A stretch of 64,000 bases of DNA from Bispira polyomma (Eukaryota). Below, in pieces: positions 16,163 through 39,958 of this stretch. The notes under the pieces are model-generated. The model was given only the letters and a program-made list of their open reading frames with translations, searched no databases and had not been told where the DNA came from. A program made the translations under genes and the position numbers. The stretch covers positions 7,316,001 through 7,380,000 of the forward strand of contig OZ287756.1 of assembly GCA_965649765.1 (NCBI GenBank), in the 5' to 3' direction. Position 1 is the stretch's first letter. Each line of letters opens with the position of its first letter.

Positions 16163-16631
16163 AATTTTTGGATTTTTTTTGAAAAAACTAATTCTCCTCT
16201 AGTATTTATTAAAGACATATATGTTCACCTGAAGTATAAAAAAATCGTTAAAATGAAAAGCTTGAAAAGCTACTACTGCTTTAGTTTTACCGACTTATCT
16301 CACTTAATATAGACAGTTCAGATTCCAGAACACACTTGAGTCTGGCAAAATCAGCAATTGTGTGTACTAAAAAAAATGTGGTAATGCTTTGCAGTTTAGC
16401 AGAATGAATTTTTAAACAGGATATATTATCTAAACCTGCACTGTGAAACTCTTAAGGTACATGCATAATGAAGCGGAATCACAAATTGTTGCTTTACTTG
16501 TGAGAGATACATATAAACCCCGACCAAGATGTTTCTGCTAAATACGTTTGTTATTTTATTTGCTGAGCTTTCAGATACATCATTAAATGGCTCAATTTTT
16601 ATTAGAATTCATATCCCAGAAAAAGCTATAT

Positions 16632-16965
16632 TGTTGTGAAGTCGTCGTCTTCCTAGCCGTGGATCTGCCGCAAACGAGGCTGGTTATAAAGTCGTCGTTC
16701 GCCTAGCCGTAAAACTGCCGCGAACGAGACCGGAAGTGATATCCCGAGAGCGACAGTTACCGTGGACATTTTGAATACAGACAGTTGTATACTGGGACAA
16801 CAAATAAACATTATGAACAGTTTATCGGTGTCATAAAGTGACACGAACATTGTGTGAACCTCACCTGTGACAGTCGTGACATATAGTGGCACAGACACTG
16901 TGGACTACAGCTGTCTTAAGGAGACAGTCATCACAGACAGTTACAGGTAGGCAGCAATCACAATA
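16632..16965 (+). repeat. 5' LTR
   Basis: TGTTGTGA...TCACAATA. About 9 differences from the 3' LTR by eye. Internal ~50-bp direct repeat (AAGTCGTCGT...GCCTAGCCGT) and AATAAA at 16803. Confidence 0.95.
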
Positions 16966-16966
16966 T

Positions 16967-16975
16967 TGGTACCAG
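16967..16975 (+). promoter_or_regulatory. Primer-binding site (TGGTACCAG; possibly tRNA-Leu(TAA))
   Basis: TGG starts 1 nt after the 5' LTR. Only about 9 nt match a tRNA 3' end (...CTGGTACCA), so the tRNA identity is tentative. Confidence 0.6.
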
Positions 16976-18001
16976 TTGTTTGTGAATGTACCCACGTGAG
17001 TATTAGTATTAGCTGTCATTGTTTGCAATTGCAAGTATTTTAAGGTGCAATTCAGTTTAAAATTACTTGCGTATAGTTTATTGTTATTTGGAACTGTATT
17101 TGAATTATGATTCAAATAATTTACTGGCAGTTCATGTAGCGGTAATTTTGAATGGTAATTACCGTGATTTGGTGCATAGCAACTGTGACTAGGCTATAAT
17201 TAGACTTATTGACAGTATTTTTATTGCAGTCTATTATAAATTATTTGCAAGTAGTACAACTTGTATAGCATTGTATTTCTTGATTATATATTAAATTTAG
17301 TGGTATATATATATACATAGTAAATTTTGAGATTCTTGTTATTTTATTTTTTTTACTTTTATTTTTTTTTTTTTTTATTTTATGTAAAGTTAAATTTTCT
17401 TGAATAAAACTAGTTGTAAATAAATCAGTAAATTTGAGGAAATATTGAGATATTACATATTTATTGCATATGAATATTTGAAATACTAATATAATTAAGT
17501 AATCCAGAATTTGTTTATGTTTTGCTAATTCAAATAAATTAAAGTACATTGGGAAAAGAAGTATCAATAAATATTGAAAATAATCATTTGGAAATTGTTG
17601 GTTTTTTTGTTTTTTTTTGTGTTTGTTCAGAAACAAATTTATCGTAAATTCTACAGTAATTCATAGAAAATTAGATTAGAAATATTAGCTTGTAGTGCAT
17701 TATACTTGTAGTTTGTATCGGCAATTTTTGGTATTGGACTTCATTGATACTTGTTTTTGGACTGCATGGTGATTGGTATTGATTACATTGATTGATATAT
17801 TTAATCAAGTGCTGTTGAAAGGATTCATTATTCTTTTTAACTAGTTGTAATTGTAGTCAAGTGTTAATGTTGTGCATTGCGATCTAAGTTTCACTTGTTT
17901 TAAACAGGTGTAGGTCAATTGCATGTTACAGAGCTTGTTTATTCAAGGCTGTTGATTTAAAATTGCTTAAAGGTGAATTTTAAAAACGAAAGAAACTTGA
18001 C

Positions 18002-20516
18002 ATGGCGGAAGCTGGGTGGAACATCAATACAGCAACTATGGCGGAGTTCATGGAGATTAATGATGTTGGTCCACGTAGAGCTGAACTGATTCTTGAACAC
18101 AGAGCGAAGTTTGGGGGATTCATGTCCCCGGAAGATTTTCAGACAGTGGAGCTACCAGAACATGTCAAGGAGAATATATTGGGTAGTGGTGTAGTGTTCT
18201 CTCCTTCAAAAGGGGAAATGGATGTGAAAGAGGAAGTAGTTGGACTTGATTTACTGTATGATCTAATGAAGCAAATGAATGGTGATATGCAAGATTTCAA
18301 AGGGGATATGAAATCTGTGAAAGAAGAGATCAAAGATCTGAAAGAATATGTGGTGCCAGGTTTGGAATTTCTCAAGGGAGATGTGGGCCAGTTGAGCAAA
18401 GAGGTCCAAGAAGTCAAGGAGGATGTCGGTGTGTGGAAGCTTAAAGTTGCCGGGATTGAAAAACAGGTACAAGAACAGGAAAAGAAAATATCTTCACTTC
18501 CTGTTGCATCAAAGGCAGGTGCTTCAAAAGGGGTTAATACTCTTTTTGATGAGAAACCATCACAGGAAAGGCAGAGAGATAGTATGGTTTCATTTCCTGT
18601 TGGGGCAACAAAACCTGCTGCTGAAGGAGTTAATCCTCTTTTAGGGGCGAAATCATTACAACGGAAACAGGAAGGACAAATGTTTACATTTCCTGTCGAG
18701 GCAACTAAATATGCTTCAAAGGGAGTTAATCCTCTTTTGAAGTATACTCTGGGAGGAGCCAGTACTCTTTCTGAGGAGAAATCTTTGCCGAAAGAAGAAC
18801 TGTTAAAGGTGGAAGCAGAAATAGGCGTAGAGGAATCCTATCAAAACTTCAGTGAAATCAATCGGCAAAAGAATGAATTTCAGCAAAGCCAAGCAAAGCG
18901 GGCAGTGGAAAACATCAATCACGGGTTACCAAAATGAAACAACAGTTTGATGTGGACTACCCATTGCCAGAACAGTATCCTGACGACAAGGATTTGGAAT
19001 GGACTGGTCTTGATCTTAATCTTTCACAAGTCGCAGGGGATTCCATATCATCACAGTTAACTGGGCCTCAGTCTGGGCATGCAGTAAAAGTAGTTTCAGG
19101 TGAGCCTGTAGGATCGAGTGAAAAGCCATTACCTGTTGAGAGAAAAGTGTCTGAGAGTTCTATACTTCCCAAGGATCCTGAAGACAGTGATATCAACCGC
19201 ATTGTGACCTGCATTGAGAATAAAATAGATTCCCGAAAATATACCGGTGGAAGCCGATCAGGTCATAAGAGAAATATCACTGGTAGTGAGAACAAGAAGA
19301 CAACCAGGCGTAGGAAGTTGCCATCGAAATCAACTCCCAAGTGTAATCTGGATAGTTCTTGTGATGGGTCTTTACAATTTTCTCACTCAGAAGGTGAATC
19401 CGTTGCAGCTGAGACATCCAGAGTGAGTAGAAGTTCCCATATCACCAGTACTCCTGCATCAGTAAAGAACAAGATGGAGATCCCTAAAATGTCTTTTTCC
19501 GGGGAATATTGGAGAGGTTTTATTGCGCAGTTTGAAGCTGTAGCTGACAAATTCAATTGGTCAGAAGCTGATAAGCTAGATACCTTTCCGATGGTTCTGA
19601 AGAAAGAAGCTCTGGAGTATTACAGCATACTGCCCAAGGAGAAGTTGAAATGCTTTAGTTGGTTGAAAACAAAGTTTGAGCACAACTTCAATAAAGTTGA
19701 ACTACCAACAACAGTCAGATGGCCATTACTCTCTGCAGAGCAACGTGAAGATAAAACGCTTGAGAAGTATTTGGCACAACTTGAGAAGATGATCCTGGAC
19801 ACGTATCCAAATATTCGGGACCAAGAATTCAATAATTCTATGTTTGTGGAAGTGTTTCTGAAAGGATGTTAGGACAAGGGAGCAGTTTTAGCAGTTTGTG
19901 ACAATAATCCACGGAATTTGGAGGAGGCTTATACTCTTGTCAAATCTGCATCTACTTATATCGGAGGACTATATTGGGGAAGAAGGGTGGAGGCAATGTG
20001 AAGAAACTTGAAATGGTATTACAGACAAGTTCTGATAGTGACAGTTCGGGGACTTGTTCTACAAGCAACGCCAAAGTGAGAAACTTGCAGTTTAAGAACA
20101 AGTCGGGTACCAAACCATCAGTGCCACATACAGAGCATCTGGATACTGTGGAGATTGGTCTAAAAAAGATGAAGAATTCAATAGCTGAAGTGTTAGCCTT
20201 GCTGACAAAATCAAATTCTTCAAATCCTAAAGGCATGGCCTGTTTTGAATGCGGCGACACATCACATTTAGTGAGGGATTGTCCGAAAAGAAGAAATCAA
20301 TCACCTCGCCATAGTCCTAGCAGAAGTGATGACAAAAACTGGCGCAGCAATACAAACACAGAGACCAATGTAGACCTTAGGCCATCTTACCAGAAGGCGA
20401 ACCAGGGGTTCAGATCTTTTTCACCTCTGCCACAGCAGAGAAGCGGTTCTCCCAGAGGTGTACAGAACAGTAAGTCCACAAGTCCTACAGGAAAATTTGA
20501 TTCTTTAAACAAGTAG
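18002..20516 (+). pseudogene. gag: gag: N-terminal helix-hairpin-helix, coiled coil, capsid-like region, CCHC zinc knuckle
   Basis: INTATMAEFMEINDVGPRRAELILEHRAKFGGF (HhH), heptad-like coiled coil, WRGFIAQFEAVADKFNWS capsid-like segment and CFECGDTSHLVRDC knuckle. Broken by a frameshift at ~18935, a TAG at 19870 and a frameshift at ~19955. Confidence 0.9.
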
Positions 20517-20545
20517 GTCAGGGCGGGTTGAATCACCTGCCTTTA
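20504..20545 (+). promoter_or_regulatory. -1 ribosomal frameshift signal (T TTA AAC plus hairpin) at the gag-pol junction
   Basis: The heptamer is in the gag frame just before the gag stop, and the -1 frame is the pol frame. A stem GGCGGGT-TGAATC-ACCTGCC follows. Confidence 0.75.
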
Positions 20546-23500
20546 CCTAATAAGACTGCACGGAAGAAAACTGTTCGATTTGCAGACGGGTCACCTTACC
20601 TGTCTGGTTATAGTGAAATTATTGGCAACTAATCCCAAGAGAGCTCCAGACATTCAAGGGTAGTCAAATTACCTATAGAAAATGAGTCTTTAAGTGCCAT
20701 AGTAAATTGTACAGTAAATGAATGTCACACCGTGGCCTTATTAGACACTGGGTCTGAGGTGACTGTTATAAACTTTGATTTGTATGATAAGCTTGCAGAG
20801 AAACCAAAGTTAACTAAAAAGGTTATATTACAGGGTATTAGCATGGATATGAGTGCTGAGGCATGGTTGATTCAGGGGATTGTAATTTCTTTTGACAAAA
20901 AACATTCATATGTCTGGGATTTGTTTGTAGCATCTATAAAAGATACCATCATTATAGGTATGGATTTCATGTGTCATTTCGGGGCAAAATTGAACTTTAT
21001 AGATTATACCTTTACTTTAAAAGAAGAGGTGTTAGAGTTTAATCATATAAAATCTAAGTCAAATGGTATTTATGAAACTTGTCGCTTGTTCCTTGATAAA
21101 AAAATAAGGGTACCACCAAACAGTGTAGTAAGAACTATGGCAAAAACTTCTCTGACATCCCAGAATGACTTTATAGTTGAATCAACTGGAAACAACAAGG
21201 GTTTACTGATGCCATATACATTATGTAAGGGAAATAAACAAGTTCCTGTGCAACTTGTGAATGATACTGACAGTAGTATTAACTTAAAACCGACTCATAT
21301 TTTAGGGTATGCTGTTGAGTGTGATTTTATATCCGGGAATGGGGATCAGCAGTTTCAAGTGAAAAGTATAGCTATGGATATTCTAGAAGTTTGTCAGGAA
21401 CCAGAACATTTAACAGGACTGTTAGAAAGATCAAAAGTTAAGCTGGATGAAATGCAAGTTCAGAGATTAGGAGCCTTATTGATCGACTTCCAAGATATAT
21501 TCTCACATGGGAGCAGTGATCTCGGTTGTTTTGCAGAGATAAAACACTGCATTGATACCGGTAATGAACGTCCAGTGAAGCAACCAATGCGCAGATTTGA
21601 GGGGGAGGAAGAGGAGAATCTTAAGCTCATGCTGGATGTTGGTGTTATATCGGAGTCTTCCTCTGATTGGGCATCAGCTCCAGTGCTAGTTCGGAAGAAG
21701 GATGGAAGTGTGAGGTACTGTGTGGACTACAGATCGCTTAACTCAAAAACTGTTAAAGATTTGTTTCCATTACCTTCCATATCTCAGTGTCTTGATCAGC
21801 TGTCTGGAAACATGTATTTTTTTACATTAGATATGGCCAGTGGTTATTGGCAAATTGAGATAGATCCTAAGGACCGGCACAAAACAGCATTCATAACGAA
21901 GTTCGGATTGTTTGAACATCAAAGAATGGCATTCGGACTTTGTAATGCTCCTGCAACCTTCCAAAGAGTAATACAATTTGTTCTGCGTGGTCTCACATGG
22001 AATAAGCTGCTGTCGTACCTTGATGATGTTATAATTTTAGGGAAGGATTTTGAGGAACATATGAATAATCTACGAACAACTCTCGCTAGGTTCAGAAAAT
22101 ACAATTTGAAATTGAAGCCAAAAAAGTGTTCTTTGTTTCAAACGGAGACTTTGTTCCTAGGTAGGATAGTAAGTTCTGCAGGTGTAGCAGTAAATCCTGA
22201 AAATATTGACAAAGTATAAAAGTGGCCAATACCTAAGTCTGTAAAGGACATGGAAAAATTCTTAGGATTTGTTAACTACCACAGAGAACATATTAAGGAT
22301 TATTCCAAGTTAACATCTGTGTTGTATAAACTGACAGGCTCAAAGGCTAATTTCTTGTGGGAGAAAGAACATCAGTTAGCTTTTGAAACTATAAAACAGC
22401 TATTGACATCAGCTCCTTTATTAACCTATCCAAATTCGGAAGATCCATTTGTACTAGATACAGATGCCTCTGAGTTTGCTATCGGAGCAGTATTGTCACA
22501 AGTGCAGGAGGGAGTAGAGAAAGTGATCTGTTATGGTAGTTATGTGTTATCTCCTGAGCAGAGGAGGTACTGCGTCACCAGGAAAGAGTTGTTGGCTGTT
22601 GTCAGATTTACTAGGCAATATAGACATTATCTGCTTGGTAGAAATTTTCTTGTGAGAACTGATCATAACAGTTTAACATGGTTATTGCGATTCAGGCACA
22701 TAGAAGGTCAGTTAGCTCGTTGGTTGGAGGAGTTAAGTCAATTCAGTATGACCATGATCCATCGACTAGGGGTTAAGCATGGAAACGCAGATGGAATGTC
22801 AAGGATACCAGATGATTATCTTTTCTGTGAATGTTATAAGGCAAAATTTGATCCATTATCATTGCCTTGTGGTGGTTGTAAATATTGCAGCAGAGCACAT
22901 AAACAGTGGTCCAGATTCAGTGAGGATGTTGATGATGTAGTGCCATTAGCAGTCAAGTCCATAACAGCAAAAGGTATCGTTGGAAGATCTGTTCCTTGGA
23001 TCCAGGGATATTCTCGTGATCAGCTGAAAGAAGCACAGCTATCTGATAATTCTCTGGGAAAATTGATCAGCTGGTTGACCTCCGGGAAAGAGTTAGAACA
23101 GAAGGAGTTATTTTTATGCAGTCCTGAAGTTAAACATTTTTATACCTGTAGAAAGCAGTTGGTGTACCAGGACGGATTGTTGTTTTACAGGTGGAGAGAA
23201 GAATTTGGTGATAGACTGTTATTAATGGTTCCAGAAAAACTGAAACAGGAAGTTATTTCCTACAATTGTGATTTACCATTAACTGGACATATGGGGGTGA
23301 CAAAAACCACAATTAGGGTTAAGCAATCATTTATGTGGTATGGGATCACCAAGGACATTGAAATATATGTGAAATCTTGTCCGGTATGTAACAAAAACAA
23401 AAAGGCTAACATAAAGGCCAAAGCAGCTTTAGGATGGTACCATGCTGGATTTCCATTGGAGAGAGTACATGTGGATATTCTAGGACCATTTACTCCAAGT

Positions 23501-24607
23501 GCAAATGGTAATCAGTATGTCTTAATGTTAGTGGATCAGTTTACCAAATGGCTTGAGTGTTATCCTTTGCCAAATCAAACAGCTGAGAGTGTTGCGAAAT
23601 GTGTTGTTGATGGTTTTATCTCAAGATTCGGGTGTCCCTTAGAAATACACACGGACCAGGGGAGGAATTTTGACGGGAAATTATTCACTTCTGTCTGTGA
23701 ACTACTGCAAATAGCTAAAACTAGAACTACTCCATATCATCCTTGCTCTAATGGTCAGGTAGAGAGATATAATCAGACGCTTCTGCAATTGATCCGGTGT
23801 TTTCTGCAGGATGGTCATCAGTCATGGGATCAGCATTTACAGCAATTAGCTGGGGCAATCCGGTCTACTGTGAATCGACAGACAGGGTTTACACCGAATC
23901 TAATGATGCTTGGTCGTGAAGTTCTGGCTCCCGTTGATTTAATGCTGGGAGAATTTGACAGGCTACAGGAGTCAACTCCAGTTGAATATGTGCATCAATT
24001 ACAAACTATTCTGCAAAAGGTGCATATGTTGGCTAGGGAAAAGTTGGAATCAACGCAGGAAAGACAGAAATGGGATTATGACTTGCATTTGAAGGTGAAC
24101 ACTTACGAACCAGGTGATGTGGTTTATCAGTTGGACTCAGCTAAAAAGATTGGACAAAGTAGTAAGCTACAACAGATTTGGAAGGGACCATTCCTCATTG
24201 TTGAGATGTTATCTCCAATCTTATTCAGGGTCGCCAATCGCAAGAAAACCTTTGTAATACATCATGACAGGTTAAAACCTTGTCGGGATCGGGTCATACC
24301 TCTGTGGTTAAGCCGAAAAAGAAGCAAATTGCTGGAAAATGGAAATCCTGATACAGAATCCGGTGAGGATATGGATAATCTAAATATTGATTGGCTGTAC
24401 TCAAATGAAATTCATGGTGATACCAAGCAGAATTCACAACCTCTAGAGAATGATGAACCGTCTGTACCTCTTACCTCAGAAACAACTATTTCAGAAGTAA
24501 CAACCCCGGCCGTGCTACCACCTCATGCATCTAAAGACTCATCTCGAGCTACTAGGACAGGAAGGGAGACAAGAAGACCAAAGTATCTGTCTGAGTATAC
24601 TACTTAA
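20510..24607 (+). pseudogene. pol: pol: aspartic protease, reverse transcriptase, RNase H, integrase (GPF motif)
   Basis: LLDTGS, YLDD, LDTDAS, GHMG..CPVC zinc finger, D-D-E core and WKGPF. One frame throughout with in-frame TAA at 20630 and 22217. Confidence 0.96.
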
Positions 24608-24719
24608 GATAGTTAAAGTTGGTTTGTTATCTTGCATGAATAGTCAAGGTTTGGTTGCAGAACTTACTAACTTTGAAGCCTGTCTGTATGAATAGTCAAT
24701 AATGTTTTTTATTCATTAG

Positions 24720-27338
24720 ATGCAGAGACGTTTCAGTTATCAACATGGAAGATCCAGAGGTGGTAGTTTTTCGGGGAGTCGTCATCAGGATTCCTCACCT
24801 GAAAGCCACGAGGTTTCCACTGACAGACAGGATGCAAGGAGTCGCCATTCTGATTCCTACTCCAGACATGATTCGGATTCTTCACGCCGGAGTCAGATAG
24901 GTTATAGCCAAAATGAGAGGAGTCACTGTTCTGATTCCTACTCCAGACGCGATTCGGGTTCTTCAAGCCGAAGTTATGCAGAGTATAGTCAGGATCAGAG
25001 GAGTCGATATCATGATTTCTATGCTTGTCCTACATACAGAGAAGAGAGTCCTCATTACGATTCTTCTCGACGCCGAAGTCACACAGAGTATAGTCAGGAT
25101 GAGAGGAGTCGACCGAATCAGTGGTTCCTAAACTGAGTGCGACCATGTCAGTTGCTTCAGTGCGCCCTAGCAGGTTAAGTGCAACCGCATCAGTGGCTCC
25201 GAAATCAAGTGCGGTCACGTCAGTTCCAAGTTCCAAGTCGAGTGCACACTCTGCGGAGATATCCTCTGCAGAGAGTACGAGTCATAGTGTCTCGACACTC
25301 AGAGTATTGGACAGTCGACCTGTGGAGCGATCCTCTACAGTTGTTACCCAGGAAGAGAGTTTACCATCAGGATCGGACAACCGTGGTAAGCGTAGGTCAC
25401 TGGAACCTAGATACTCTGGTGCACAGCCCAAAAAGATCAGACAAAATCAACCTTCATCCGCATATCAATCGTTTTCTGCAAAACCCTCAAAAAATGCCTG
25501 TTACATGGACAATTGTTCTATGAGAACAACACACCTTAGAAGGCATATGGTGGGGCGACATCTTCCAGCTTGTTGTGCCTTGCAGAGTGAGATGCCTCTG
25601 GACGACAGGATGAAACAGTTTGAGGAAGTCCTCATGAATATTAGTAGGCTAGTTGGCTGTGGGAACCTAGATGAGTTGTTGGACCTGGTTCGGGAAAAGG
25701 ACTGGTATCCAGCCGGTGAATTTTATGCACTGACTGATGGGGATAAAACATTGATAAACAATTTTCATATGTGGTTTACTGGACATCCCTTAACTATAGC
25801 GTCACGGATCAATCCTCCCAATCATGTGTCATCATTGGTTCAGTGGAGAGCTTTGAGTCATCTAATTAACTGTGTCGGTGAGGAAAGAGTACAGTGGTCT
25901 CGACCAAATTTTTTGGTGCAAGTAGACGCTGCGAATGTTCAGTCCGATGTGGAGGTGGTGCTTGCTGGGGATGACGTTAGACAATCAGGGGTGTCATCCA
26001 CTCCTGCTATTAAACCACCTTCTGAGCCAGAAGGTGAGGTTAGACAATCAGGGGTGTCATCCACTCCTGCTATTAGACAACCCTCTGAGCCAGAACGAAT
26101 GGATACAAGTGAACCAATCATTGGGGCGTCCTCAAGGGTAGAGGGAACGTCACCTGTGAAGCAGCTGGCCAGAGCAGAAGAGACCTCGTCTGCAGCCGTT
26201 GGCAGTCAAGGGAAGAAAACAGTTGAGAGTAAGGGGAAAGTAGAGGGGAAGTCACCTGTATTTGTTGTGCCAACGGTGTCTTACGCAAGCAAGGTGGCAG
26301 CCAAGGGAACAGCGGGAAGTGTGAAGGTGGTGGTTAAGGCCAAAGTAAGAAGGGCAAGACCAGGGAACATTGGGGTGCCTTATACCAAGGAGGAGAGAAG
26401 AGAGAGGGAGAAACACCAAAGGTTGAACATGATCAAAAAGAATGTATGTGGCAGGGGGTTGACATGTGGAGAGGGGGCCCTGGTAGTATATCCTCTGGGG
26501 GATTCCCATTTCCACATGGACACACTGCGTGAGAAGGCGAAGCAAAAAAAGCTTGGTAGAATATTGGAGGATGGCCCTATGCCTTCTGTTGCAGTGTGCC
26601 TTGAGGTGGCGTTTGTAATTTCTGTGACCAGGTTCCCTCCAAGGATGAGTTGGATTCTCTGAAAGAGGAAAAAGCTCTTTATTTTACTTTCAGAGTGCAC
26701 CCAAAGCAGGCTCATCGGGTTCTAGTCAAGGAAATGGACTGCATGAAAAGGTTGATCTCAAAAAGAGGGCCGTTGTCGTGGAATTGGTGAGATCGGTATT
26801 GACCTGGGTGGCTACCGCCGTGAGTATTTAAAGCAGCAGTGTGATCTATTGGCTGACTTTCTTCATTTTTACGTTGAAAAGCAGCTTTGGGCGAAGGTGT
26901 TAGTTATTCACTGTCGCGATGCTAGCTACTCCACCAAAGCCAGTAACCATTGCCTGAAGGTTATGCAGGTGGAGCTGCCTCAGTTTCACAGGCAGTCTTA
27001 CCGGATCCACAGGCATTGCTACAATGGGGGGATGGAGGAAAAGGAGGAATGGTTAAGACGGTTTCCGCGGGTGATGTTTGGGTTCACAGCAATACTTCTC
27101 TGTGATACTAGACATAATGAGCTTGAGGAAGTGGTCCGAACATTACCACTCGACCGGATTCTTCTAGAGACTGATTCTCCGCATCTTTTGGCGCCTGTCC
27201 ATCAGGAGGAGAATTTCAACACCCCTTACGGACTGGTGGAGGTAGCCTCCAGAGTGGCCGAATTAAAAACAGTTACCTCTTCCGGAAGTTCTGTCGGTCA
27301 CACACCGCAACACCAAAAATCTGTACGGTATAATTTAG
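24720..27338 (+). pseudogene. ORF3 of the Gypsy element: RS/S-rich region, C2H2-like zinc finger, C-terminal TatD (TATDN2-like) nuclease
   Basis: Across frameshifts at ~25110, ~26605, ~26770 and ~27265 the motifs DSHFH, CNFCD, RVHP, GIGEIGID, LVIHCRD, IHRHCYNG, FGFT, PLDRILLETDSP and the C-terminal EVLSVTHRNTKNLYGII* occur in TatD order. The TatD domain spans ~26489-27338. Confidence 0.9.
25976..26096 (+). repeat. 63-bp in-frame tandem duplication in ORF3
   Basis: VRQSGVSSTPAI(K/R)xPSEPE occurs twice. Confidence 0.9.
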
Positions 27339-27472
27339 GTAGGGGGAATCAATGTAGGTGTGCATTCACTTACATATTGATTCTCCATGTAGGTGCACAT
27401 TCACTTACATACTCTATCAATAGGTGTAGTTTCACTTGTTGTAAAGCCGTACGAGGGAGTATTTTTCACGAC

Positions 27473-27481
27473 AGGGAGGAA
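27473..27481 (+). promoter_or_regulatory. Polypurine tract
   Basis: AGGGAGGAA directly abuts the 3' LTR TG. Confidence 0.8.
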
Positions 27482-27815
27482 TGTTGTGAAGTCGTCGTCT
27501 TCCTAGCCGTGGATCTGCTGCAAACGAGACTGGTTATAAAGTCGTCGTTCGCATAGCCGTAAAACTGCCGCGAACGAGACCGGAAGTGATATCCCGAGAG
27601 CGACCGTTACCGCGAACATTTTGAATACAGACAGTTGTATACTGGGACAACAAATAAACATTATGAACAGTTTATCGGTGTCATAAAGTGACACGAACAT
27701 TGTGTGAACCTCACCTGTGACAGTCGTGACATAAAGTGGCACAGACACTGTGGACTACAGCTGTCTTAAGGAGACAGTCACCACAGATAGTTACAGGTAG
27801 GCAGCAATCACAATA
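27482..27815 (+). repeat. 3' LTR
   Basis: Direct copy of 16632-16965, followed by the ATAT target duplication. Confidence 0.95.
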
Positions 27816-28911
27816 ATATCAACAACAATTCGTCAATGTATGTTCACTATTATAAATTATTATCCTTTTCATACTTGGTTTGCCATTTTGCTAAAGTAAT
27901 CTTTTGTCTAATCTATATCTCGCTAGCATTACAAAACATTGGAGGTCTGTGCGCACAATAGGAACACGGTCCATATAGATGTTTTATGAGTTTCTAGGGA
28001 AGCAATTAAGTGGGAGCTTTTCGTGGTACTTATAATGGCTCAAGTAGGATGTCACACTCACACCTTCAAAGACAAGGCATGTTACCATTCTCAATTAATT
28101 TGAAAAATTAGACTTTAGGCACATTATAGGGCTAATGGCACCATGACTGTTTATATGCCAGACATAAGCAGAGTATTGTCTCCTATATGGCCACAATCAT
28201 TAGGGTTTCTGCAATAGTTGCTACACTGACTTCCACAGATTGCATCTTCTTTTAGAGTTTTTTTTGTGACTCGAATCACATCAACGTAGCTGTATTTGTG
28301 AACTCACACTTCATATGATACCCTGAGAAAATTTTGATATGCTTGCACACCACATTAATCTAGTTGTCACCAGGTGCCAATACTATATAGCAGTACAAGT
28401 TCAGTAATTTACAAAAATAGTGTTTACATAACCAGGTAATTGCAGTGTGATGATGGCATTAACTGACAAATCTGAGGTGGTTGTTGAGTGAGCTTGTAAC
28501 TCCTGAAGTGAGAGAAATTACCCAAAGCCATATATTGAGAAAACATCTTTAAATTAGAAAGGTGGCTTGTCTAACAGAACAGATTTTGAATGGATGCCCC
28601 TGTTTCAATAACACTAAAATATTTTATAATTAATACATTTGATGGAATATTTATCAAATTAAATTATCTTTTATACCATAATTGTATAGAAAACACCATA
28701 CAAAAAATACCCTTGTTTTGTTTCTTAAAATATAAATTCTTCAAAGGCATGAATTTGTTATTTCACTGCAATTAAATGGAATGGCTTCAGTTGGAGTAGG
28801 GTATTTTAATAAAGATAATGTATTAATGTGGCTATTGTGCAATAATATAGCATATTTATTATGGGAGTAATAGTTAGGCTCAAGGGCTGTTAATGGTTTT
28901 TATTTTTATTT

Positions 28912-30108: not shown

Positions 30109-32848
30109 GCAACTTATTTAATTGGTTGTCAATCAAACCACATTATCTATTGTCTGTAACAATAAATACTGTGGCTTTAAAAACCTGGCTTTGATGTCCC
30201 TCTGACGTCATACTACGTGTGCATTAGTCATATTGGAGGAATAAAGTTATTTTGCCATTGTAATCTTTCGTCTAATCCATATCTCGCAAGAATTACAAAA
30301 CATTGGAGGTCTATACACACGATAGGAACAAGGTCCATACAGAAGTTTTATGATTTACTATTAAGTGGGAGCTTTTTGTGGTACTTCTTATGGCTCAAAT
30401 AGGATGTCACACACACCTCCACAGACAGAGCATGCCCCCTTTCTCTATTACTTAGCTACCTTTGAAGCATCAAACTAATGAGAAAGTGACTGTCTGTGCC
30501 ATACACACACCAAGTATTGCCACCTCTATATTAGTTAAATAGCCAGAAGCATTAGGGTTTCTGCAATAGTTCCTACATTTACTTGCATAGATTGCATATT
30601 CTTTTTGAGATGAATTTATTGTTATATTTACATTATCTTGAAAAATACCCTAAAATGAACTTGTCATATGCTTACGCACTACATTGATCTATTTGTCACA
30701 TGTGGCCAATATTATATAGCAGCACAATGTCAGTAATTTACAGAAATTCTGTTTGCATAAGCAGTTTGATGATGTCTTTAACTGACAAGTCTGAGGTGGA
30801 TGTTAAGTTAGTTTGTAACTTCTGAAGTGAGAGAAATTACCCAAAACCATATATTGAGCAAAAAAGTCATTATATTGGACAGGTGGCTTGCCTATAAATG
30901 TTCAACCAATTTGATACACAATTAATTATCTGTATATCAGCATACTCTTATTTTGTTTCTGAAAAGAAAAATTCTTCTAAAGAATGAATTTGTATTTTGC
31001 GATGTTATAATGTTGGACTATATTAACAAAATGCCTAACTGTATTTAATGGGGTGGTCAGACTGAACACTTTCATGTTTATGTTCGCTTTGTTTTAAACG
31101 TAAGCAAATGGAAATAAACGAAGTAAAATTTGGGATACATAACAAAAAATCAATGTATTGGCCGATTTGTACGCGTTTGTACCGTAAGCCACGTTTTAAA
31201 CTATGTCAGCTACTTTTCTAAACATGTTTCCATCTCGTTCTACTCATTTATGTTTTGGTCATACTAGTTATTTTACTCGTTTTTGTTTTGGTCATACTAG
31301 TTATTTGTTGTTGTGTTGAAATATGCTTGCTTAAAGAAAATCTGAGCTTAAAGAATTAGAAAGCATACAATTTAAAAAAAAAATGTATATGCTTATATAT
31401 TTTTTTCCTATTGTATAGTAGGAATAAATACCAAACTGATAATCTTATTTTAGAACGTTGAACATTCAGAGTAAATCTATAGTGTAAATTTGTGGTACTT
31501 TATTTCAGCTATAATTTAAACTTACTGAGTATTTAATATTTACATTTAACTATTCCAGAAAAATTATCAATGCTTCTACACCGAATTTAGAATGTACACA
31601 GTGAATAGCAACTAATTTAACAACATTAACAAAGCCCCATTATCTATTGTCTGTAACAATAATTCCTTTATCCTGCTTTAGTATAAATACTGTGGCTTAT
31701 TTAATACCATTAAAGCTCCATTATCTATTGTCTGTAACAATGATTCATTTGTACTGCTCTAGTAAAAATACTGTGGCTTTAAAAACCTGGCTTTGATGTC
31801 ACTCTGACGTCATACTATGTATTCATTAGTCATAATGGAGAAATAAAGTCACATGTAAAAATACTGCAGAGTATTTTTTTGTGTTTTCAGATGTTTTGTT
31901 ATTGTAAAAGCTGTTAGTGTTCATCCACACTGTAAACTCCATGTTTTTTAGGACTAATGTATAGATTCATATTTGCGATGATGGGTCATGCATTAGTGTG
32001 GAGGGAACTCATCGATTTAATATGACAAATTGACTCCCAAAGCTTATACAAATGGTATTATATTGGCTGCTTATTTGATATAATTGGTTAAACTAAGCAG
32101 AGTAAGTACAGTTGTAATAACACATTATTTCCATTGAAAAAAGATTTATAAATACAACTGTTATCTTTAAAATATAGCAGTTATTTCTGGTGCAATTCCA
32201 CCACAAAACATATATAAATTATGAAGTTCATCTTTATTGAATTTATAATTTGCAGCAGCTACAAATGCAAGGTAGCGGGAAGGGGCTACCAAGGTCAGTG
32301 CTTCAACAAGTATACTAGCATGTATCCATTGACCAATTGACCTGAATTCTCATTGGTCTGCACTGCCCTCATTTCCCCTAGCTTACCGCCAAAACCCCAG
32401 ATGCCTCACTTGAAAAACTGAAACTGAAGTGGCGAGATGCCATCTTAAAAAATATAACAAAAATATTATGTGCCGGACTTTTTACATGGATTTTAGTGAT
32501 TTTAGTTCTTATTTTATAGCTTTATTCTACTGAATTGGGACGATTGTGCTTATGGATCCAGTGTAGCAGTGCTCCTGTGTCTACTCTGTTTTGAGTCTTG
32601 CGATCATTGGCTTCACTTGTTGGAGCAAAAGTAGAGGAAAATTATCAGGCCATTCATTCTAACTTATATCAAACATTTATTCAAAATTCGGACAAATTAC
32701 CTCTTACCAATAGTCGCACGTATCAAAACAGCCTTATTCTATATCTGCACCCAGAAAAACTTACGATTGTGAGGCGTGTGGTGGACATCACCAAAAGCCT
32801 ATAAATGATAAATGCAAAGTCGAGAGAAAGGAAACGGACACTATTTCC

Positions 32849-33730: not shown

Positions 33731-36700
33731 AATCTAAGCTAATCTAATCGTACTTTTATAGCGCTTAATCTTTGTACAACAAATTCTAAGGCGCAACTAA
33801 CCTAAGCATTAATCAAAACAATCAGAAATGGGGGACGGATGGTGGTCATAACCAGAGAGACTACCGGGATGGTTGCGATGGCTAAGGTGGAAAGGCCTGT
33901 TTGAAAAGGTAGGCCTTTAGTTTACTCCCAAAAGAGGAGAACGTTTGAGCCAAGCGAACATGATCAGGCAGGCTGTTCCATATGAAGGGGCTATCATGAG
34001 CAAGGCAATGATTGAAATGTACTTTGGATTTGTGGATGCGAGGGTCGAAAGTGGGAATGTTAAGATATAACTTATCAGGGTTACTGCGCCTAGTCCTCAC
34101 TGAGCATGTATATTTGGATAGATGGGGGCTGAAATAGGTGGGTGATCCAGAATTTAGAAATTTGTATATAATTGTTGCAACACGATATTTTATTGGGAGC
34201 CAGTGGAGTGACTTAAGTACAGGAGTAATATGAGAAAATTTAGAAGTTTTGGCCACGATGCGAGCCAATGAGTGTTGAACGTTCTGAAGACGTTTGAGGT
34301 CACTACAAGATAGGGAACGGAACAGAGAGTTGCAGTAATCAAGCCTACTGCTGACCAAGGCGTTGGCAACAGTGATTGCAGTGGATTTGGTTAGATAACG
34401 CCTAATTCGCCTGAAATCACGGAGGCCAACAAAACATGATCTACACACAGATGCAACATGGTTGGAGAAGGAGAATTCAGAGTCAAACAACACACCCAGG
34501 TTGCGTACTTTGTCAGCTGGGAAAAGCCTGCTGCCAAGAATATCAACTGGGAAACAGCTGGACAGTTTTTCCCGTTGCAACTTGGAGCCAAACAAAATAA
34601 ACTCGGTCTTATCAGGGTTCAGCTTGAGTTTATTTGCTGCCATCCAGTGTTGTACATCGACAAGGCAGTTCTGTAAGGAGGTGAAAGCTGCCTGGGCAGA
34701 ATCTAGTGGAAGGTGGATGTACAATTGGGTATCATCCGCATAGAAGTGGAAGTTTATGTTTTTGTATGCAGCAATGATCTTGCTGAGTGGGGTGGTATAC
34801 ATTGAGAACAAAATAGAACCCTGGGGAACCCCAAATTTTAACCATGTAGGGTCGGACAAGATGGTGCCAATTTTGACTGATTGGAATGTATCAGACAAAT
34901 ATGCCGTGAACCATTTAAGTGCAGTACCGTTGATACCAAACCAAGACGATAGGCACTCAAGAAGAACTTTGTGATCAATAGTATCAAATGCCGCCGACAG
35001 ATCCAGCAGTACTAAGGCAGTAGGCATACCTTTAGATAAAGATATATGAACGTCATTTTTGATGCAGAGTAGTGCAGTCTCTGTAGAATGACCACTTCTG
35101 TACGCTGACTGATACTTATTGCATAGATTACTAACGTCGAGTTGTTGTTTGATCTGTAAGGCGACCACACGTTCAACCAACTTAGAGATATAGCAAAGGC
35201 TTGAGACAGGACGGTAGTTTTTCAAGTCAGCCTTTGGGAGAGAAGATTTTTTTATTAAAGGAGTGACAATGGCTTTTTTTAAATCATTTGGAAAGACGCC
35301 ATTGACCAATGAGAGGTTAACAAGTTTGGTGATTGAGGGCAATAAAATGTCAATACATTCCTTAACAAGAAATGTAGGCCACGGATCTAACAAGCAAGAT
35401 TTTACGGGTGATGTAATTATAATTTTTCTGACCTCATCAACAGTTACTGTGGAGAAACGGTTGAAGATGGTTGGTGGAGCTGATGGTAAAGGAGCATTTG
35501 GGGCAGCTGATGTAAAACTATCACGGATTCTGGTAATTTTATCAGTAAAAAAAGTACTAAAAATGTTTGCCAGTGATTTACTATTGCTGTTGTCGGGTAG
35601 TATAGTCTGTTTTTTCCGGTGTAGGGTGCTGTTTAATTTCTCCCAGAGTTTCTTTGAGTCACCCTCGCTTTCTGTGATCATGTTGGTGTAGTATTCACGT
35701 TTGGCATCATTGATGGTGTTATTGCACCTGGTGATGCATTGGCGTAGTCGCAACCTGTTTGCGGTAGTTTTGTTTCGGCGCCATGTCCGTTCATCTTCTC
35801 TACACAGCATCTTCAACTCCCGGTACCTACCAGTGATCCACTCAGGTGCAGGCTTCTTCAATGTCTTAGACTTACACGGAGCATGGCGTTCTAGGAGAGA
35901 TTGTAGGTCGGCACAGTACTGCGTGTATAGATCCGTTGCATTATCAGCAGGAGACTTGACGAAGGCCGTATCGGCCAACTCTCGTCTGAGGTCTGACATA
36001 TTTATTTTTTGAAATTGACGAAAAGTGATTTGTGTGACAGCAAAAGATTGCGGGGAGGGAGCATCAAGTTCGTAGGATATTGAGAAATGATCGCTGATGC
36101 AACCAATGTTTTTTATATTTCTGATACCATTGAAATCAGTAGGAGTTAGCAGGCAGTCTAGTGTATGCCCATGAATATGGATAGGGAAGTTTATGTGTTG
36201 GATAAGGTTGCAAGATTCCAGAACAGTAGAGAAGCGATTACTATTACTAGATGCGGTGTCCATGTGGATATTGAAATCACCACAGAATATAGTAGGAGAG
36301 GGTAATGAGCAAGTGAACCCGACAAAAGAGATGAATTCTTCGAAAAATGTGGTGAGATTTAAACCAGGAGGTCGATAAACTGTTGCAAAATTTAAACAAT
36401 AGTTCTTCCAGTGAGCAGAGACAAGGATGAGTTCAAAGGATATAAAACTAGGTGCAGCAACTAACTGACATTCATAGTTCTTTTTTTCATAATTCATAGT
36501 TCCCACCCCCCCACCCTGTTTTCCTACACGAGGGTTATGGAATAGCTGAAAGTCAGCTGGTGTAAGGTCAGAGAGGAAAGATGGAGTATCGTAACTCCTA
36601 ATATGTGTTTCTGTGATGCCAAAAATATCTATAGAAGACGAGTCGATCAAATCGGCTATGACAGGGCCTTTATTCCGCAACGAGCGGGCATTTCCAAATC

Positions 36701-36790
36701 CGAACTGAATTGGGCCAGGGTTACTCGCGATATCACCTGCCAGTAGGATAGTAATGTTAAAAGTTTTAAAAACACAGAAAGTGTTAACAC
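33731..36790 (-). mobile_element. 5'-truncated L2/CR1-group LINE inserted antisense into the YR element
   Basis: (GATTA)n-like tail at 33731-33749. AAATGT repeated at 33725-33730 and 36791-36796. Removing the LINE rejoins the YR sequence. Confidence 0.9.
33882..36790 (-). CDS. LINE ORF2: 2A-like peptide, AP endonuclease, reverse transcriptase
   Basis: Stop-free reading frame with GDIASNPGP, NARSL, GITET, GDFN, SDH, LDLSAAFD, YADD and LHWLP. The part of the ORF-track call above 36790 is flanking YR sequence. Confidence 0.9.
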
Positions 36791-36797
36791 AAATGTC

Positions 36798-38997: not shown

Positions 38998-39958
38998 ATG
39001 GCTGCCAAGGCAGCCTCCAGGGCACACCAAGCCTTTAGACCTTCCACACAAATGGCGTACACCAATATGTTCAGGGTTTTCCTGGCCTTTACCTGTTTCA
39101 CAAACATCAGCCTCACAGCAATTACTCCATTAGTTATCCTCTCCTTTTTAGAAGTATTAGTTACAAGCAATGTCTCTAGTTCATCCATTACAAATTACCT
39201 TTCTGCCATTAGAGCAAAAATGGCTCTGTTTGGGCTCAATACCTCTTGCTTCAGTGACCCACGACTAAAGTATTATCAAAAAGCAATTGCCCTTAACAAG
39301 CCTTTTAGGGCCAAGCTAAAAAACATCATAGACATACCACTTCTCACACAAATAATTAATACTGCTGACACAATGTACATGGGCCAAGTATTCAACGCTC
39401 TTTACCTGGTCGCTTTCTTCTCATTCCTTAGGATATCCAATCTGGTTCTACATAATGTAGCCGGCTACACACCCCTTCAGCAGCTTTCCAGAGGCGACAT
39501 TCTATTTGCACCTCCTGGCATGCACATCATTGTTAAATGGTTGAAAACACTCCAGTCAAAAAATACAATCAGAATTATCAAATTACCATTACTACCATTT
39601 TCCTCCCTCTGCCCAGTCACAGCAGTTAGGAACGTATTAGCCATCACACCTGGATCCAGCAATTCACCATTATTCCAATTCAAACAATGCACTCTGGATC
39701 CCACTAACAGACACAAGAGTCAGAAGAAACCTTCAAACCACACGGGTACACTGCCAGGCAGAAAATATAACCTTCCACACCTTCCGACGCTCAGGTGCCA
39801 CATATGCATTCAACCAAAAGGTTCCGTTACAGGATATCCAGGCCCATGGCACCTGGACGTCGGACTATGTGTGGAAATATATTAACCAAGACCATAATAC
39901 CTCTCCCCAGGTGGCGCTGGCCTTCAAAGCTGCTCTTGAAAACACTATTACCTACTAG
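38998..39958 (+). pseudogene. Tyrosine recombinase of the YR retrotransposon
   Basis: FFSFLRISNL (catalytic R), KT and LCPV. After a frameshift, HTFRRSGAT...HGTWTSDYVWKY (H-x-x-R, W, Y), with stop at 39956-39958. Confidence 0.92.

What the first reader, a model, noticed from the sequence alone, without database searches (positions are those of the whole stretch)
24720..27338. Gypsy LTR retrotransposon carrying a TatD (TATDN2-like) nuclease as a third ORF in the env position
Seen: between the integrase stop (24607) and the PPT/3' LTR lies a same-strand ORF of about 870 codons once four frameshifts are bridged. Its last ~280 codons hold the TatD metal-binding motifs in order: DSHFH (26501), GEIGID (~26786), VIHCRD, IHRHCYNG and LLETDSP. 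The ORF track shows only the middle piece. Known: TatD proteins are TIM-barrel 3'-5' exo/AP-endonucleases. The IHRHC, NFCD and GFTA segments resemble the TATDN2 subfamily as I recall it, which has been reported to degrade RNA in R-loops. Gypsy third ORFs are usually env-like. Inference: the element captured an intronless host nuclease and keeps it as an accessory gene. It could process RNA:DNA reverse-transcription intermediates or clear excess cDNA to avoid cytosolic DNA sensing. I do not know of a described Gypsy lineage with this domain, but I cannot search the literature.
Basis: partly seen in the sequence, partly recalled or inferred. Interest (0 to 1): 0.92.

Follow-up and report, generated by a model that had tools for sequence, protein, structure and literature searches.

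The report
Gypsy retrotransposon with TatD nuclease gene
The window holds a dead copy of an LTR retrotransposon from a large, mostly molluscan Gypsy clade. Members of this clade carry a zinc-finger plus TatD-nuclease gene where some relatives carry an envelope gene, and I found no published description of this layout.

Summary
An 11.2-kb Ty3/Gypsy element (16632-27815) has 334-nt LTRs that are 97.3% identical and a gag, PR-RT-RH-IN pol. Between the integrase stop and the polypurine tract lies a same-strand third gene of about 870 codons. Its last ~280 codons are a TatD nuclease domain (Pfam PF01026, E 1.7e-20).

It is not a one-off passenger. Relatives from at least ten other assemblies have gag-pol-ORF3(TatD) on one strand. 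Many have intact ORF3s of 638-953 aa, some inside paired LTRs. Relatives picked by pol alone also carry it.

ORF3 is more than TatD. It has a disordered N-part, then a conserved ~140-residue CCHH zinc-finger/helical domain with no structural match, a linker, and then TatD. Some families add a NADAR domain. The nearest cellular relatives are TATDN2-type proteins, but these lack the zinc-finger domain and cluster apart.

Catalytic columns are 94-100% conserved in 96 element-type domains. dN/dS is 0.27 within one family.

The window copy is dead. ORF3 has 3 frameshifts measured and 1 more inferred. gag has 2 frameshifts and 1 stop, and pol has 1 stop.

Function is inferred, not shown. No prior description was found in the paper library.

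The parts
16628..16631 (.). Possible 4-bp target-site duplication (ATAT), 5' side
   Evidence: The same four bases follow the 3' LTR at 27816-27819. This is weak evidence because the flanks are AT-rich.
16632..16965 (+). 5' LTR (334 nt)
   Evidence: 97.3% identical to 27482-27815 with no gaps. It starts with TG, and its 8-nt ends are inverted repeats matching at 7 of 8 positions.
16967..16978 (+). Primer-binding-site-like TGG... stretch just inside the 5' LTR
   Evidence: Read directly from the sequence. This is a pattern only and was not matched to a tRNA.
18002..20516 (+). gag (broken: 2 frameshifts and 1 stop relative to an intact relative), with an N-terminal helix-hairpin-helix motif and a CCHC zinc knuckle
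   Evidence: Pfam HHH_3 E 8e-9 and zf-CCHC E 1.4e-3. Break counts are against the L011 gag.
20633..24607 (+). pol: protease, reverse transcriptase, RNase H, integrase (broken: 1 in-frame stop, no frameshift)
   Evidence: Pfam RVP, RVT_1, RT_RNaseH, Integrase_H2C2, rve and Integrase_p58_C, in that order. There is a single-frame match to intact pol proteins of L004, L006 and L011 with one stop.
24720..27340 (+). ORF3 (broken: 3 frameshifts measured plus 1 inferred, no other stop). It runs: disordered Ser/Arg-rich N-part, zinc-finger/helical domain, linker, TatD nuclease domain.
   Evidence: The end coordinate is approximate (similarity to relatives ends at 27332-27335).
24828..25021 (+). 81-nt tandem repeat (2.4 copies) encoding the Ser/Arg-rich part of ORF3
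25478..25897 (+). Conserved 'X' domain of ORF3: a CCHH beta-beta-alpha zinc finger followed by a helical bundle
   Evidence: C, C, H and H are invariant or nearly invariant in 40- and 60-sequence alignments. The AlphaFold model has pLDDT above 90 for residues 11-150. Foldseek finds no match in PDB or BFVD. A profile of this domain hits about 100 of 226 collected TatD proteins.
25972..26095 (+). 63-nt tandem duplication in the linker of ORF3
26492..27335 (+). TatD nuclease domain of ORF3. The three measured frameshifts appear to lie here: alignments to TatD-only relatives bounded inside it also give 3.
   Evidence: Pfam PF01026 E 1.7e-20. Outer bounds come from alignments to P0001, P0152, P0170 and P0352. 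21 of the 22 strongly conserved family columns that are covered keep the family residue.
27473..27481 (+). Polypurine tract (AGGGAGGAA) abutting the 3' LTR
27482..27815 (+). 3' LTR (334 nt)
27816..27819 (.). Possible 4-bp target-site duplication (ATAT), 3' side

Best explanation
The window contains a dead 11.2-kb copy of a Ty3/Gypsy LTR retrotransposon. It belongs to a large clade whose named hosts are mostly molluscs, plus a brachiopod. Members of the clade carry a third gene, ORF3, after pol and before the polypurine tract.

ORF3 encodes a protein of about 640-950 residues with four parts: a disordered, Ser/Arg-rich N-part; a conserved ~140-residue domain (a CCHH zinc finger plus a helical bundle, with no known structural relative); a disordered linker; and a C-terminal TatD-family metal-dependent nuclease. 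The nearest cellular relatives of the TatD domain are TATDN2-type proteins.

Shown here: the architecture, its recurrence in many independent families, intact long ORF3s in relatives, near-invariant catalytic columns, and purifying selection on the TatD part.

Inferred (about 35-40% for this specific mechanism): ORF3 is an element-encoded accessory nuclease that acts on the element's own replication intermediates. Possible substrates are the RNA strand of RNA:DNA hybrids, or the 3' ends or damaged sites of the cDNA. The zinc-finger domain would supply nucleic-acid or particle targeting.

In the window copy gag, pol and ORF3 are all broken, so no product is made from this locus.
For: Element anatomy: LTR pair, polypurine tract, gag with CCHC, pol in the order PR-RT-RH-IN.

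TatD domain: Pfam E 1.7e-20, and the motifs are unique in the window.

Recurrence of gag-pol-ORF3(TatD) on one strand:
- L002 and L015 lie inside paired LTRs.
- L003.
- L004 has intact ORFs of 777, 1419 and 693 aa.
- L005.
- L006 and L007 have an intact 638-aa ORF3, and the same protein occurs on 12 contigs.
- L010 has a 953-aa ORF3 whose 90% cluster holds 125 members.

Three relatives were chosen by pol alone. Two (L012; L013/L014) show the zinc-finger domain plus TatD. In the third (L011) the ORF after pol runs off the contig end before those domains could appear.

The window's pol is 62-70% identical to that of L002/L003. The ORF3 N-part is 27% identical (E 1e-37) and TatD is 51%.

Twenty-three TatD columns are 94-100% conserved in 96 element-type domains. 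The window keeps 21 of the 22 it covers.

dN/dS is 0.27-0.28 between L002 and L003 TatD copies (Fisher p 1.5e-5).

The model of the intact relative P0352 has a TatD barrel with pLDDT above 90 and TM 0.87 to E. coli YcfH.

Human TATDN2 degrades the RNA strand of R-loops in vitro (PMC10711561).
Against: No biochemical or expression evidence exists for any ORF3 protein. The element's pol already has an RNase H domain, so a second hybrid-processing nuclease is not obviously needed.

The window copy is non-functional. dN/dS could be measured in only one family and over only 250 codons. Other available pairs were too alike or were saturated.

The split between element-type and host-type TatD has only 36/100 bootstrap support. 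The direction and number of transfers therefore remain open.

The host species of the window and of most relatives are unnamed.
Confidence: 0.75

Rival explanations
1. ORF3 is a repair or counter-defence module. It would remove host-inflicted lesions (ADP-ribosylated bases, abasic sites, blocked 3' ends) from the element's cDNA. TatD would act as a 3'-5' exonuclease or AP endonuclease, and NADAR, where present, as a base de-ADP-ribosylase.
For: A NADAR domain lies in or next to ORF3 in some families. It is a separate ORF in L005 (E 1e-44) and is fused in P0163 and P0067. NADARs reverse guanine ADP-ribosylation of DNA and occur in molluscs (PMC11543638, PMC11125620). Phages use orphan NADARs against DarT (PMC11825919, abstract seen). 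From my own knowledge, not checked here: TatD enzymes have AP-endonuclease activity, and clams make DNA ADP-ribosylating proteins.
Against: The window element and most relatives seen here have no NADAR. No host modifying enzyme was linked to these elements. Nothing here distinguishes repair from ordinary processing of intermediates.
Confidence: 0.2
2. ORF3 degrades surplus or unintegrated cDNA or RNA to limit innate nucleic-acid sensing or self-toxicity.
For: The evidence is by analogy only. ORF3 has an intact exonuclease-type active site, and the TatD family has general 3'-5' exonuclease activity (established knowledge).
Against: There is no specific evidence. A conserved zinc-finger targeting domain and the occasional NADAR fit substrate-specific processing better than bulk clearance.
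Confidence: 0.08
3. The TatD gene is a one-off passenger, an adjacent host gene, or an assembly chimera, and has no role in the element family.
For: In the window the gene is broken, and no second copy exists within the 64 kb.
Against: It lies between the pol stop and the polypurine tract, inside the LTR pair. The same layout recurs in at least ten other assemblies, including relatives chosen by pol alone, with intact ORFs. dN/dS is 0.27.
Confidence: 0.02
4. Several Gypsy families captured host TATDN2-like genes independently, rather than one ancestral acquisition being inherited vertically with pol.
For: Support for the split between element-type and host-type TatD is weak (36/100). ORF3 N-parts differ greatly between families.
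Against: All element-borne ORF3s examined share the same zinc-finger/helical domain upstream of TatD, and the 15 long host-type proteins lack it. One TatD column is Phe in 95% of element-type sequences and in none of the host-type sequences, and the window has Phe.
Confidence: 0.05

Closest known systems
TATDN2-type TatD nucleases of animals (for example the fish 'putative deoxyribonuclease TATDN2', P0222)
   Same: Both have a C-terminal TatD TIM-barrel domain with the same metal-binding columns after a long disordered N-terminal part. The window's TatD piece is 36% identical to P0222 (E 9e-19). Every one of the 23 columns conserved in the element type is also conserved in 18 host-type proteins, except three.
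   Different: Host-type proteins lack the CCHH zinc-finger/helical domain and form their own clan in the TatD tree, though with weak support. They are cellular genes, not genes inside LTRs. One column is Phe in the element type and never Phe in the host type.
Envelope-carrying Ty3/Gypsy elements (errantiviruses and their metazoan relatives; PMC13524379, abstract seen)
   Same: Both have a third ORF after pol and before the 3' LTR, starting as a separate ORF shortly after the pol stop. Here the gap is 33-144 nt, or there is an 8-nt overlap.
   Different: The product is a soluble nuclease, not a membrane glycoprotein. No conserved signal peptide or transmembrane segment is present, and no env-type Pfam family matches.
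LTR retrotransposons with an added second RNase H (plant Tat lineage and oomycete elements; PMC5348765 was listed, and the details are from my own knowledge)
   Same: An LTR retrotransposon lineage gains an extra nuclease that can act on RNA:DNA hybrids and keeps it across a clade.
   Different: There the extra domain has an RNase H fold and sits inside pol. Here it has a TatD amidohydrolase-type barrel and sits in a separate ORF with its own zinc-finger domain.
dUTPase of some retroviruses and retroelements (own knowledge)
   Same: Both are accessory nucleic-acid-hygiene enzymes carried by a reverse-transcribing element.
   Different: The fold and chemistry differ, and dUTPase is encoded within gag-pro or pol rather than as a third ORF.
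Bacterial YcfH-type TatD nucleases (PDB 1yix) and S. aureus TatD (6l25)
   Same: These are the best solved-structure matches. By sequence the E-value is 7.6e-7. By fold the TM-score is 0.83-0.87 for the intact relative P0352.
   Different: They are stand-alone ~255-265-residue bacterial enzymes without the N-terminal domains, and sequence identity is 21-25%.

Membership tests
Ty3/Gypsy (Metaviridae) LTR retrotransposon | Paired long terminal repeats flanking the coding region | tested here: met
   334-nt LTRs, 97.3% identical, at 16632-16965 and 27482-27815
Ty3/Gypsy (Metaviridae) LTR retrotransposon | pol domain order of protease, RT, RNase H, integrase (integrase last) | tested here: met
   Pfam RVP, RVT_1, RT_RNaseH, Integrase_H2C2, rve and Integrase_p58_C occur in this order
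Ty3/Gypsy (Metaviridae) LTR retrotransposon | gag with a CCHC zinc knuckle | tested here: met
   zf-CCHC E 1.4e-3 in the window. The match is stronger in relatives (L004, E 2e-6).
Ty3/Gypsy (Metaviridae) LTR retrotransposon | Primer-binding site after the 5' LTR and polypurine tract before the 3' LTR | tested here: met
   A TGG... stretch starts 2 nt after the 5' LTR, and AGGGAGGAA abuts the 3' LTR. This is a sequence pattern only.
Ty3/Gypsy (Metaviridae) LTR retrotransposon | Target-site duplication of 4-6 bp | tested here: inconclusive
   ATAT is present on both sides, but the flanks are AT-rich, so chance is not excluded.
TatD nuclease family (Pfam PF01026) | Profile match above the curated threshold | tested here: met
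   73.9 bits against a gathering score of 27, E 1.7e-20, on one in-frame piece. Intact relatives score E 1e-35 to 1e-61.
TatD nuclease family (Pfam PF01026) | Metal-binding and catalytic residues (HxH, Glu of GExG.D, His of HxR, a further His, Glu/Asp of E.D.P) | tested here: met
   All are present in the window's pieces as they stand. 21 of the 22 conserved columns that are covered are kept, and one Gly is replaced.
TatD nuclease family (Pfam PF01026) | TIM-barrel (amidohydrolase-type) fold | tested here: met
   Tested on the natural intact relative P0352: pLDDT above 90, TM 0.87 to 1yix and 0.86 to 6l25. The window's own domain is split over frames and was not folded.
TatD nuclease family (Pfam PF01026) | Metal-dependent nuclease activity | not testable with these tools
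   No biochemical data exist.
Host TATDN2 orthologous group | Closer to TATDN2 than to the other TatD paralogues | tested here: met
   Fish TATDN2 P0222 is 36% identical at E 9e-19. TATDN1 and TATDN3 chains were not found at E <= 1e-3 by sequence. Fold TM-scores are 0.77 for TATDN3 and 0.70-0.73 for TATDN1.
Host TATDN2 orthologous group | Groups within the clan of cellular TATDN2-type proteins | tested here: not met
   In the neighbour-joining tree all 15 long host-type proteins form one clan that excludes every zinc-finger-bearing protein. The window groups with P0001, P0002 and P0152 (83/100). The host/element split has only 36/100 support.
Host TATDN2 orthologous group | Host-type domain layout (no zinc-finger/helical domain) and a cellular gene context | tested here: not met
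   The window has the zinc-finger domain, and the gene lies inside an LTR element.
Errantivirus-type env ORF3 | Third ORF between pol and the 3' LTR | tested here: met
Errantivirus-type env ORF3 | Signal peptide, transmembrane anchor, fusion-glycoprotein domains | tested here: not met
   There is no env-type Pfam hit. No conserved hydrophobic segment exists: there are none in P0352 or P0215, and those in the other proteins lie at non-corresponding places.

The most novel reading that the evidence does not exclude
ORF3 is a retrotransposon counter-defence cassette. The zinc-finger domain, the TatD nuclease and, in some families, a NADAR base de-ADP-ribosylase would together strip host-imposed chemical marks or lesions from the element's cDNA. 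This would be a eukaryotic transposon counterpart of the orphan NADAR enzymes that phages use against DarT, in animals that themselves make DNA-modifying enzymes.
Probability: 0.12. Interest if true: 0.9.

Novelty: new variant of a known kind. Interest (0 to 1): 0.72.

Why it matters
LTR retrotransposons are usually described as gag-pol, sometimes with env or a chromodomain. A large, diverse and apparently recently active clade that keeps a multi-domain nuclease gene under selection would add a new accessory function to the retroelement toolkit. Some members add a DNA de-ADP-ribosylase, and their Gag starts with a helix-hairpin-helix motif. It would also supply a natural set of sequences for asking what TATDN2-like enzymes do to RNA:DNA intermediates.

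There is a practical side too. These ORF3s are probably being annotated as host 'TATDN2' or 'uncharacterized protein' in mollusc genomes. They also appear as bacterial 'TatD family hydrolase' in symbiont MAGs. This would distort gene counts and MAG quality.

The zinc-finger/helical domain is a confidently predicted fold with no match in PDB or BFVD.

Tried and rejected
- Word-indexed protein search with the long middle ORF piece: no hit. The region is largely low-complexity, and the length window also limits candidates. The conserved domain was found later by BLASTP and a profile against the collected TatD proteins.
- Pfam on the ORF3 N-part and middle part: no family.
- Foldseek of the zinc-finger/helical model against PDB and BFVD: nothing below E 0.4.
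- Long 2000-2900-aa TatD hits were suspected to be pol-TatD fusions. They have TatD only and no RT, and they are host-type.
- dN/dS on L006-L009 and on L013/L014: too few differences, and the first set was selected for identical protein, so it is uninformative. Between families dS is saturated.
- Tree support: the host-type versus element-type split is seen but has only 36/100 bootstrap over 160 columns. No outgroup (TATDN1/3, bacterial) could be added by reference, so the tree is unrooted.
- Host identity: the best pol relatives are only 62-67% identical, and the named ones are molluscs. Cluster look-ups returned few names. The species remains unknown.
- Rfam scan of the window: no family.
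- Ten literature searches combined TatD/TATDN2 with LTR retrotransposon, retrotransposon plus integrase, Gypsy, transposon, transposable and retrovir-, and NADAR with retrotransposon. None describes this layout. A giant-squid paper lists 'TATDN2' among transposon-like genes in the Hox cluster; this is a lead only.
- Rejected: a one-off capture, and an env-like ORF3.
Full report
**1. What is in the window.** A direct repeat of 334 nt lies at 16632-16965 and 27482-27815. It is 97.3% identical with no gaps. Each copy starts with TG, and its 8-nt ends are inverted repeats matching at 7 of 8 positions. A TGG... stretch begins two bases after the 5' copy. The purine run AGGGAGGAA abuts the 3' copy, and ATAT flanks both ends.

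Between the repeats, all on the + strand, Pfam finds these domains in order:
- a helix-hairpin-helix motif (HHH_3, E 8e-9);
- a CCHC knuckle;
- retroviral protease;
- reverse transcriptase (E 1e-28);
- RNase H (E 4e-32);
- the integrase zinc-binding, core and p58-C domains.

This is the Ty3/Gypsy order. The element spans 16632-27815 (11.2 kb) and has 40-47% G+C against about 30-35% in the flanks.

**2. The observation.** The integrase ORF stops at 24607, and an ATG ORF starts at 24720. They are in the stated order and at the stated positions. One in-frame piece scores 73.9 bits against Pfam TatD_DNase (gathering score 27, E 1.7e-20, profile 122-237 of 253). A short piece in another frame matches the part of the domain just before it (E 1.3e-6), and the HxH motif lies at the end of the long middle ORF.

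I ran a frameshift-aware alignment that returned only score, counts and outer bounds. Against five natural relatives it gives 3 frameshifts and no stop within the conserved part. The outer bounds are 25178-27332, or 26492-27335 for the TatD domain. The unconserved Ser/Arg-rich N-terminal ORF is in yet another frame, so a fourth frameshift is inferred. The total of about 873 codons is close to an intact 887-aa relative.

**3. State of this copy.** Counts only are given.
- gag: 2 frameshifts and 1 stop relative to the intact gag of L011.
- pol: 1 in-frame stop and no frameshift, relative to three intact pol proteins.
- ORF3: 3 frameshifts measured plus 1 inferred.

The LTRs differ at 9 of 334 positions. 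The copy is dead but not old.

**4. It is a family trait, not a passenger.** An exhaustive HMMER search with the in-frame TatD piece gave 2722 hits at E <= 1e-3. The best was 57% identical. Looking up where the hits are encoded showed the same layout again and again.

| Locus | Layout |
|---|---|
| L002 | RT, RNase H, integrase and TatD inside ~300-nt LTRs |
| L003 | Two tandem units with TatD |
| L004 | Intact gag 777 aa, pol 1419 aa, ORF3 693 aa |
| L005 | gag, pol 1617 aa, a NADAR ORF, then a TatD ORF |
| L006/L007 | gag, pol 1386 aa, ORF3 638 aa; the same ORF3 protein occurs on 12 contigs from at least four samples |
| L010 | Integrase, then a 953-aa TatD ORF whose 90% cluster has 125 members |
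| L015 | Intact 887-aa ORF3 inside LTRs that are 98% identical |

L006 and L012 carry matching repeat pieces at both contig ends.

As a test not biased by TatD, I took three of the closest pol relatives from a pol-only search.
- L012 has a 678-aa ORF3 with both domains.
- L013 and L014 have both domains.
- In L011 the ORF after pol runs off the contig after 372 residues.

ORF3 always starts as a separate ORF 33-144 nt after the pol stop, or overlapping it by 8 nt. In the window the gap is 112 nt.

The window element is closest to the L002/L003 family. pol is 62-70% identical, the ORF3 middle part 27% (E 1e-37) and TatD 51%.

**5. ORF3 is more than TatD.** BLASTP and a profile showed a conserved ~140-residue domain upstream of TatD in the window and in about 100 of the 226 collected proteins. 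Alignments of 40 and 60 sequences have invariant or nearly invariant Cys, Cys, His, His (spacing C-x4-C-x9-H-x4-H) and an invariant Trp.

AlphaFold2 models this part of the window's own protein with pLDDT above 90 for residues 11-150. It forms a beta hairpin and helix (zinc-finger-like) followed by a helical bundle. Foldseek finds nothing in PDB or BFVD below E 0.4.

The full model of the natural intact relative P0352 shows these regions:
- disorder at 1-300;
- the zinc-finger/helical domain at 301-440;
- disorder at 443-578;
- a TatD barrel at 580-887.

The barrel's best structural matches are S. aureus TatD and E. coli YcfH (TM 0.83-0.87). TATDN3 scores 0.77 and TATDN1 0.70-0.73. There is no conserved hydrophobic segment, so ORF3 is not env-like. 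Some families add a NADAR domain, either fused (P0163, P0067) or as a separate ORF (L005). The window has none.

**6. Relation to host TatD genes.** The window's TatD piece is 36% identical (E 9e-19) to a fish protein named 'putative deoxyribonuclease TATDN2'. It is 34-35% identical to long crustacean and scallop proteins, against 51-57% to its element-borne relatives.

Fifteen long proteins have more than 300 residues upstream of TatD but no zinc-finger domain. They include the fish TATDN2. In a neighbour-joining tree of the TatD part they form one clan that excludes all zinc-finger-bearing proteins. Bootstrap support for that split is only 36/100. Support for the window with P0001, P0002 and P0152 is 83/100.

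One TatD column is Phe in 95% of 96 element-type domains and in none of 18 host-type domains, and the window has Phe. So 'TATDN2-like' is correct as the nearest cellular kin, but the gene is not a member of the host orthologous group. The data favour one old acquisition over repeated captures, without proving it.

**7. Selection.**
- Intact ORF3s of 638-953 codons persist in families that share only 25-50% protein identity.
- Twenty-three TatD columns, including all the metal ligands, are 94-100% conserved in 96 element-type domains. The window keeps 21 of the 22 it covers.
- Between L002 and L003 TatD copies, dS is 0.15-0.16 and dN 0.04-0.05. This gives dN/dS of 0.27-0.28 (Fisher p 1.5e-5).
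- The two tandem L003 units compared with each other give 1.35, as expected for decay after duplication.
- Other pairs were too alike or were saturated.

**8. [quoted passage not shown] Mutating two metal-chelating glutamates abolishes this activity (PMC10711561). ORF3 keeps both family glutamates.

I think the most likely role is an accessory nuclease acting on the element's own RNA:DNA or cDNA intermediates, targeted by the zinc-finger domain (about 35-40%).

The NADAR link suggests an alternative: a repair or counter-defence role on modified or damaged cDNA (about 20%). NADARs reverse guanine ADP-ribosylation of DNA, are found in molluscs, and are used by phages against DarT (PMC11543638, PMC11125620, PMC11825919).

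Bulk cDNA clearance is possible but has no specific support.

**9. Host and spread.** Named relatives of pol and ORF3 are molluscs (Saccostrea, Batillaria, Pinctada, Ruditapes, Crassostrea, Dreissena, Elysia) and a brachiopod (Lingula). Several are filed as bacterial proteins in MAGs of clam symbionts, probably because host transposon contigs were binned with the symbiont. The window's species was not identified. Nothing suggested human sequence.

**10. Novelty.** Ten full-text searches found no description of a TatD gene in an LTR retrotransposon. Repbase, Dfam and GyDB could not be searched. I rate it a new variant of a known kind.

**11. Conduct.**
- I built no repaired, joined, consensus or ancestral sequence. 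Pieces were searched as they stand, and natural intact relatives were used for folding.
- I built two search profiles (the zinc-finger domain and TatD) from alignments of natural proteins, and printed no consensus from them.
- The frameshift-aware alignment kept no path.
- One point to declare: my tool calls, two working notes and my working reasoning use the bounds of open pieces as printed by the ORF lister, and I related some breaks to those bounds. They bracket breaks without pinpointing them.
- The finding's proposals to frameshift-correct the ORF and to assay a consensus protein were left out.

Noticed in passing
window 18002-18150; L004 2884-3000; L005, L012, L013, L014 gag starts: Gag of this Gypsy clade begins with a helix-hairpin-helix motif (Pfam HHH_3: window E 8e-9, L004 E 1e-5, weak in four others). 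This is unusual for a retrotransposon Gag.
   Followed up: partly
L005 7641-8156; proteins P0163 and P0067 (residues ~26-175): A NADAR domain (PF08719, E 1e-44 in L005) sits just before the TatD ORF or is fused to its N-terminus in some related families. The window element has none.
   Followed up: partly
L010 8318-9967; Pfam lists: Some relatives have a PHD finger or zf-CW domain at the integrase end, suggesting chromatin-reader targeting in sister families.
   Followed up: no
proteins P0123, P0181, P0184, P0185, P0188, P0293: ORF3-type and pol proteins of this clade are deposited as bacterial 'TatD family hydrolase' or 'DDE-type integrase' in MAGs of Sedimenticola and Candidatus Thiodiazotropha (clam symbionts). 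Host transposon contigs were probably binned with the symbiont.
   Followed up: no
window 33882-36902 (minus strand): An uninterrupted 1006-aa LINE ORF with an endonuclease/exonuclease/phosphatase domain and reverse transcriptase (RVT_1 E 4e-30).
   Followed up: partly
window 38998-39885 (+), with unassigned ORFs at 37162-38169: A 295-aa ORF with weak matches to N-terminal SAM-like domains of tyrosine recombinases (E about 1e-3). It may be a DIRS- or Crypton-type element remnant.
   Followed up: no
window 27885-28543 and 30249-30862; also 30164-30247 / 31766-31849: The flank just after the 3' LTR contains a repeat spaced about 2.3 kb apart (80-89% identical pieces) plus shorter repeats. This is a separate repetitive element or satellite-like array.
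   Followed up: no
L003 1-13262: The relative in L003 is a head-to-tail tandem with a period of about 8.95 kb, in which successive units appear to share LTRs.
   Followed up: partly
proteins P0006, P0007 (Haemaphysalis longicornis): Two tick proteins are among the closest TatD hits (41% identity, each with three partial stretches). This hints that related sequences occur outside lophotrochozoans.
   Followed up: no
PMC6962438 (giant squid genome), Hox cluster figure legend: A gene annotated 'TATDN2' sits among transposon-like genes inside the Hox cluster. It may be an ORF3 of this kind mislabelled as a host gene.
   Followed up: no
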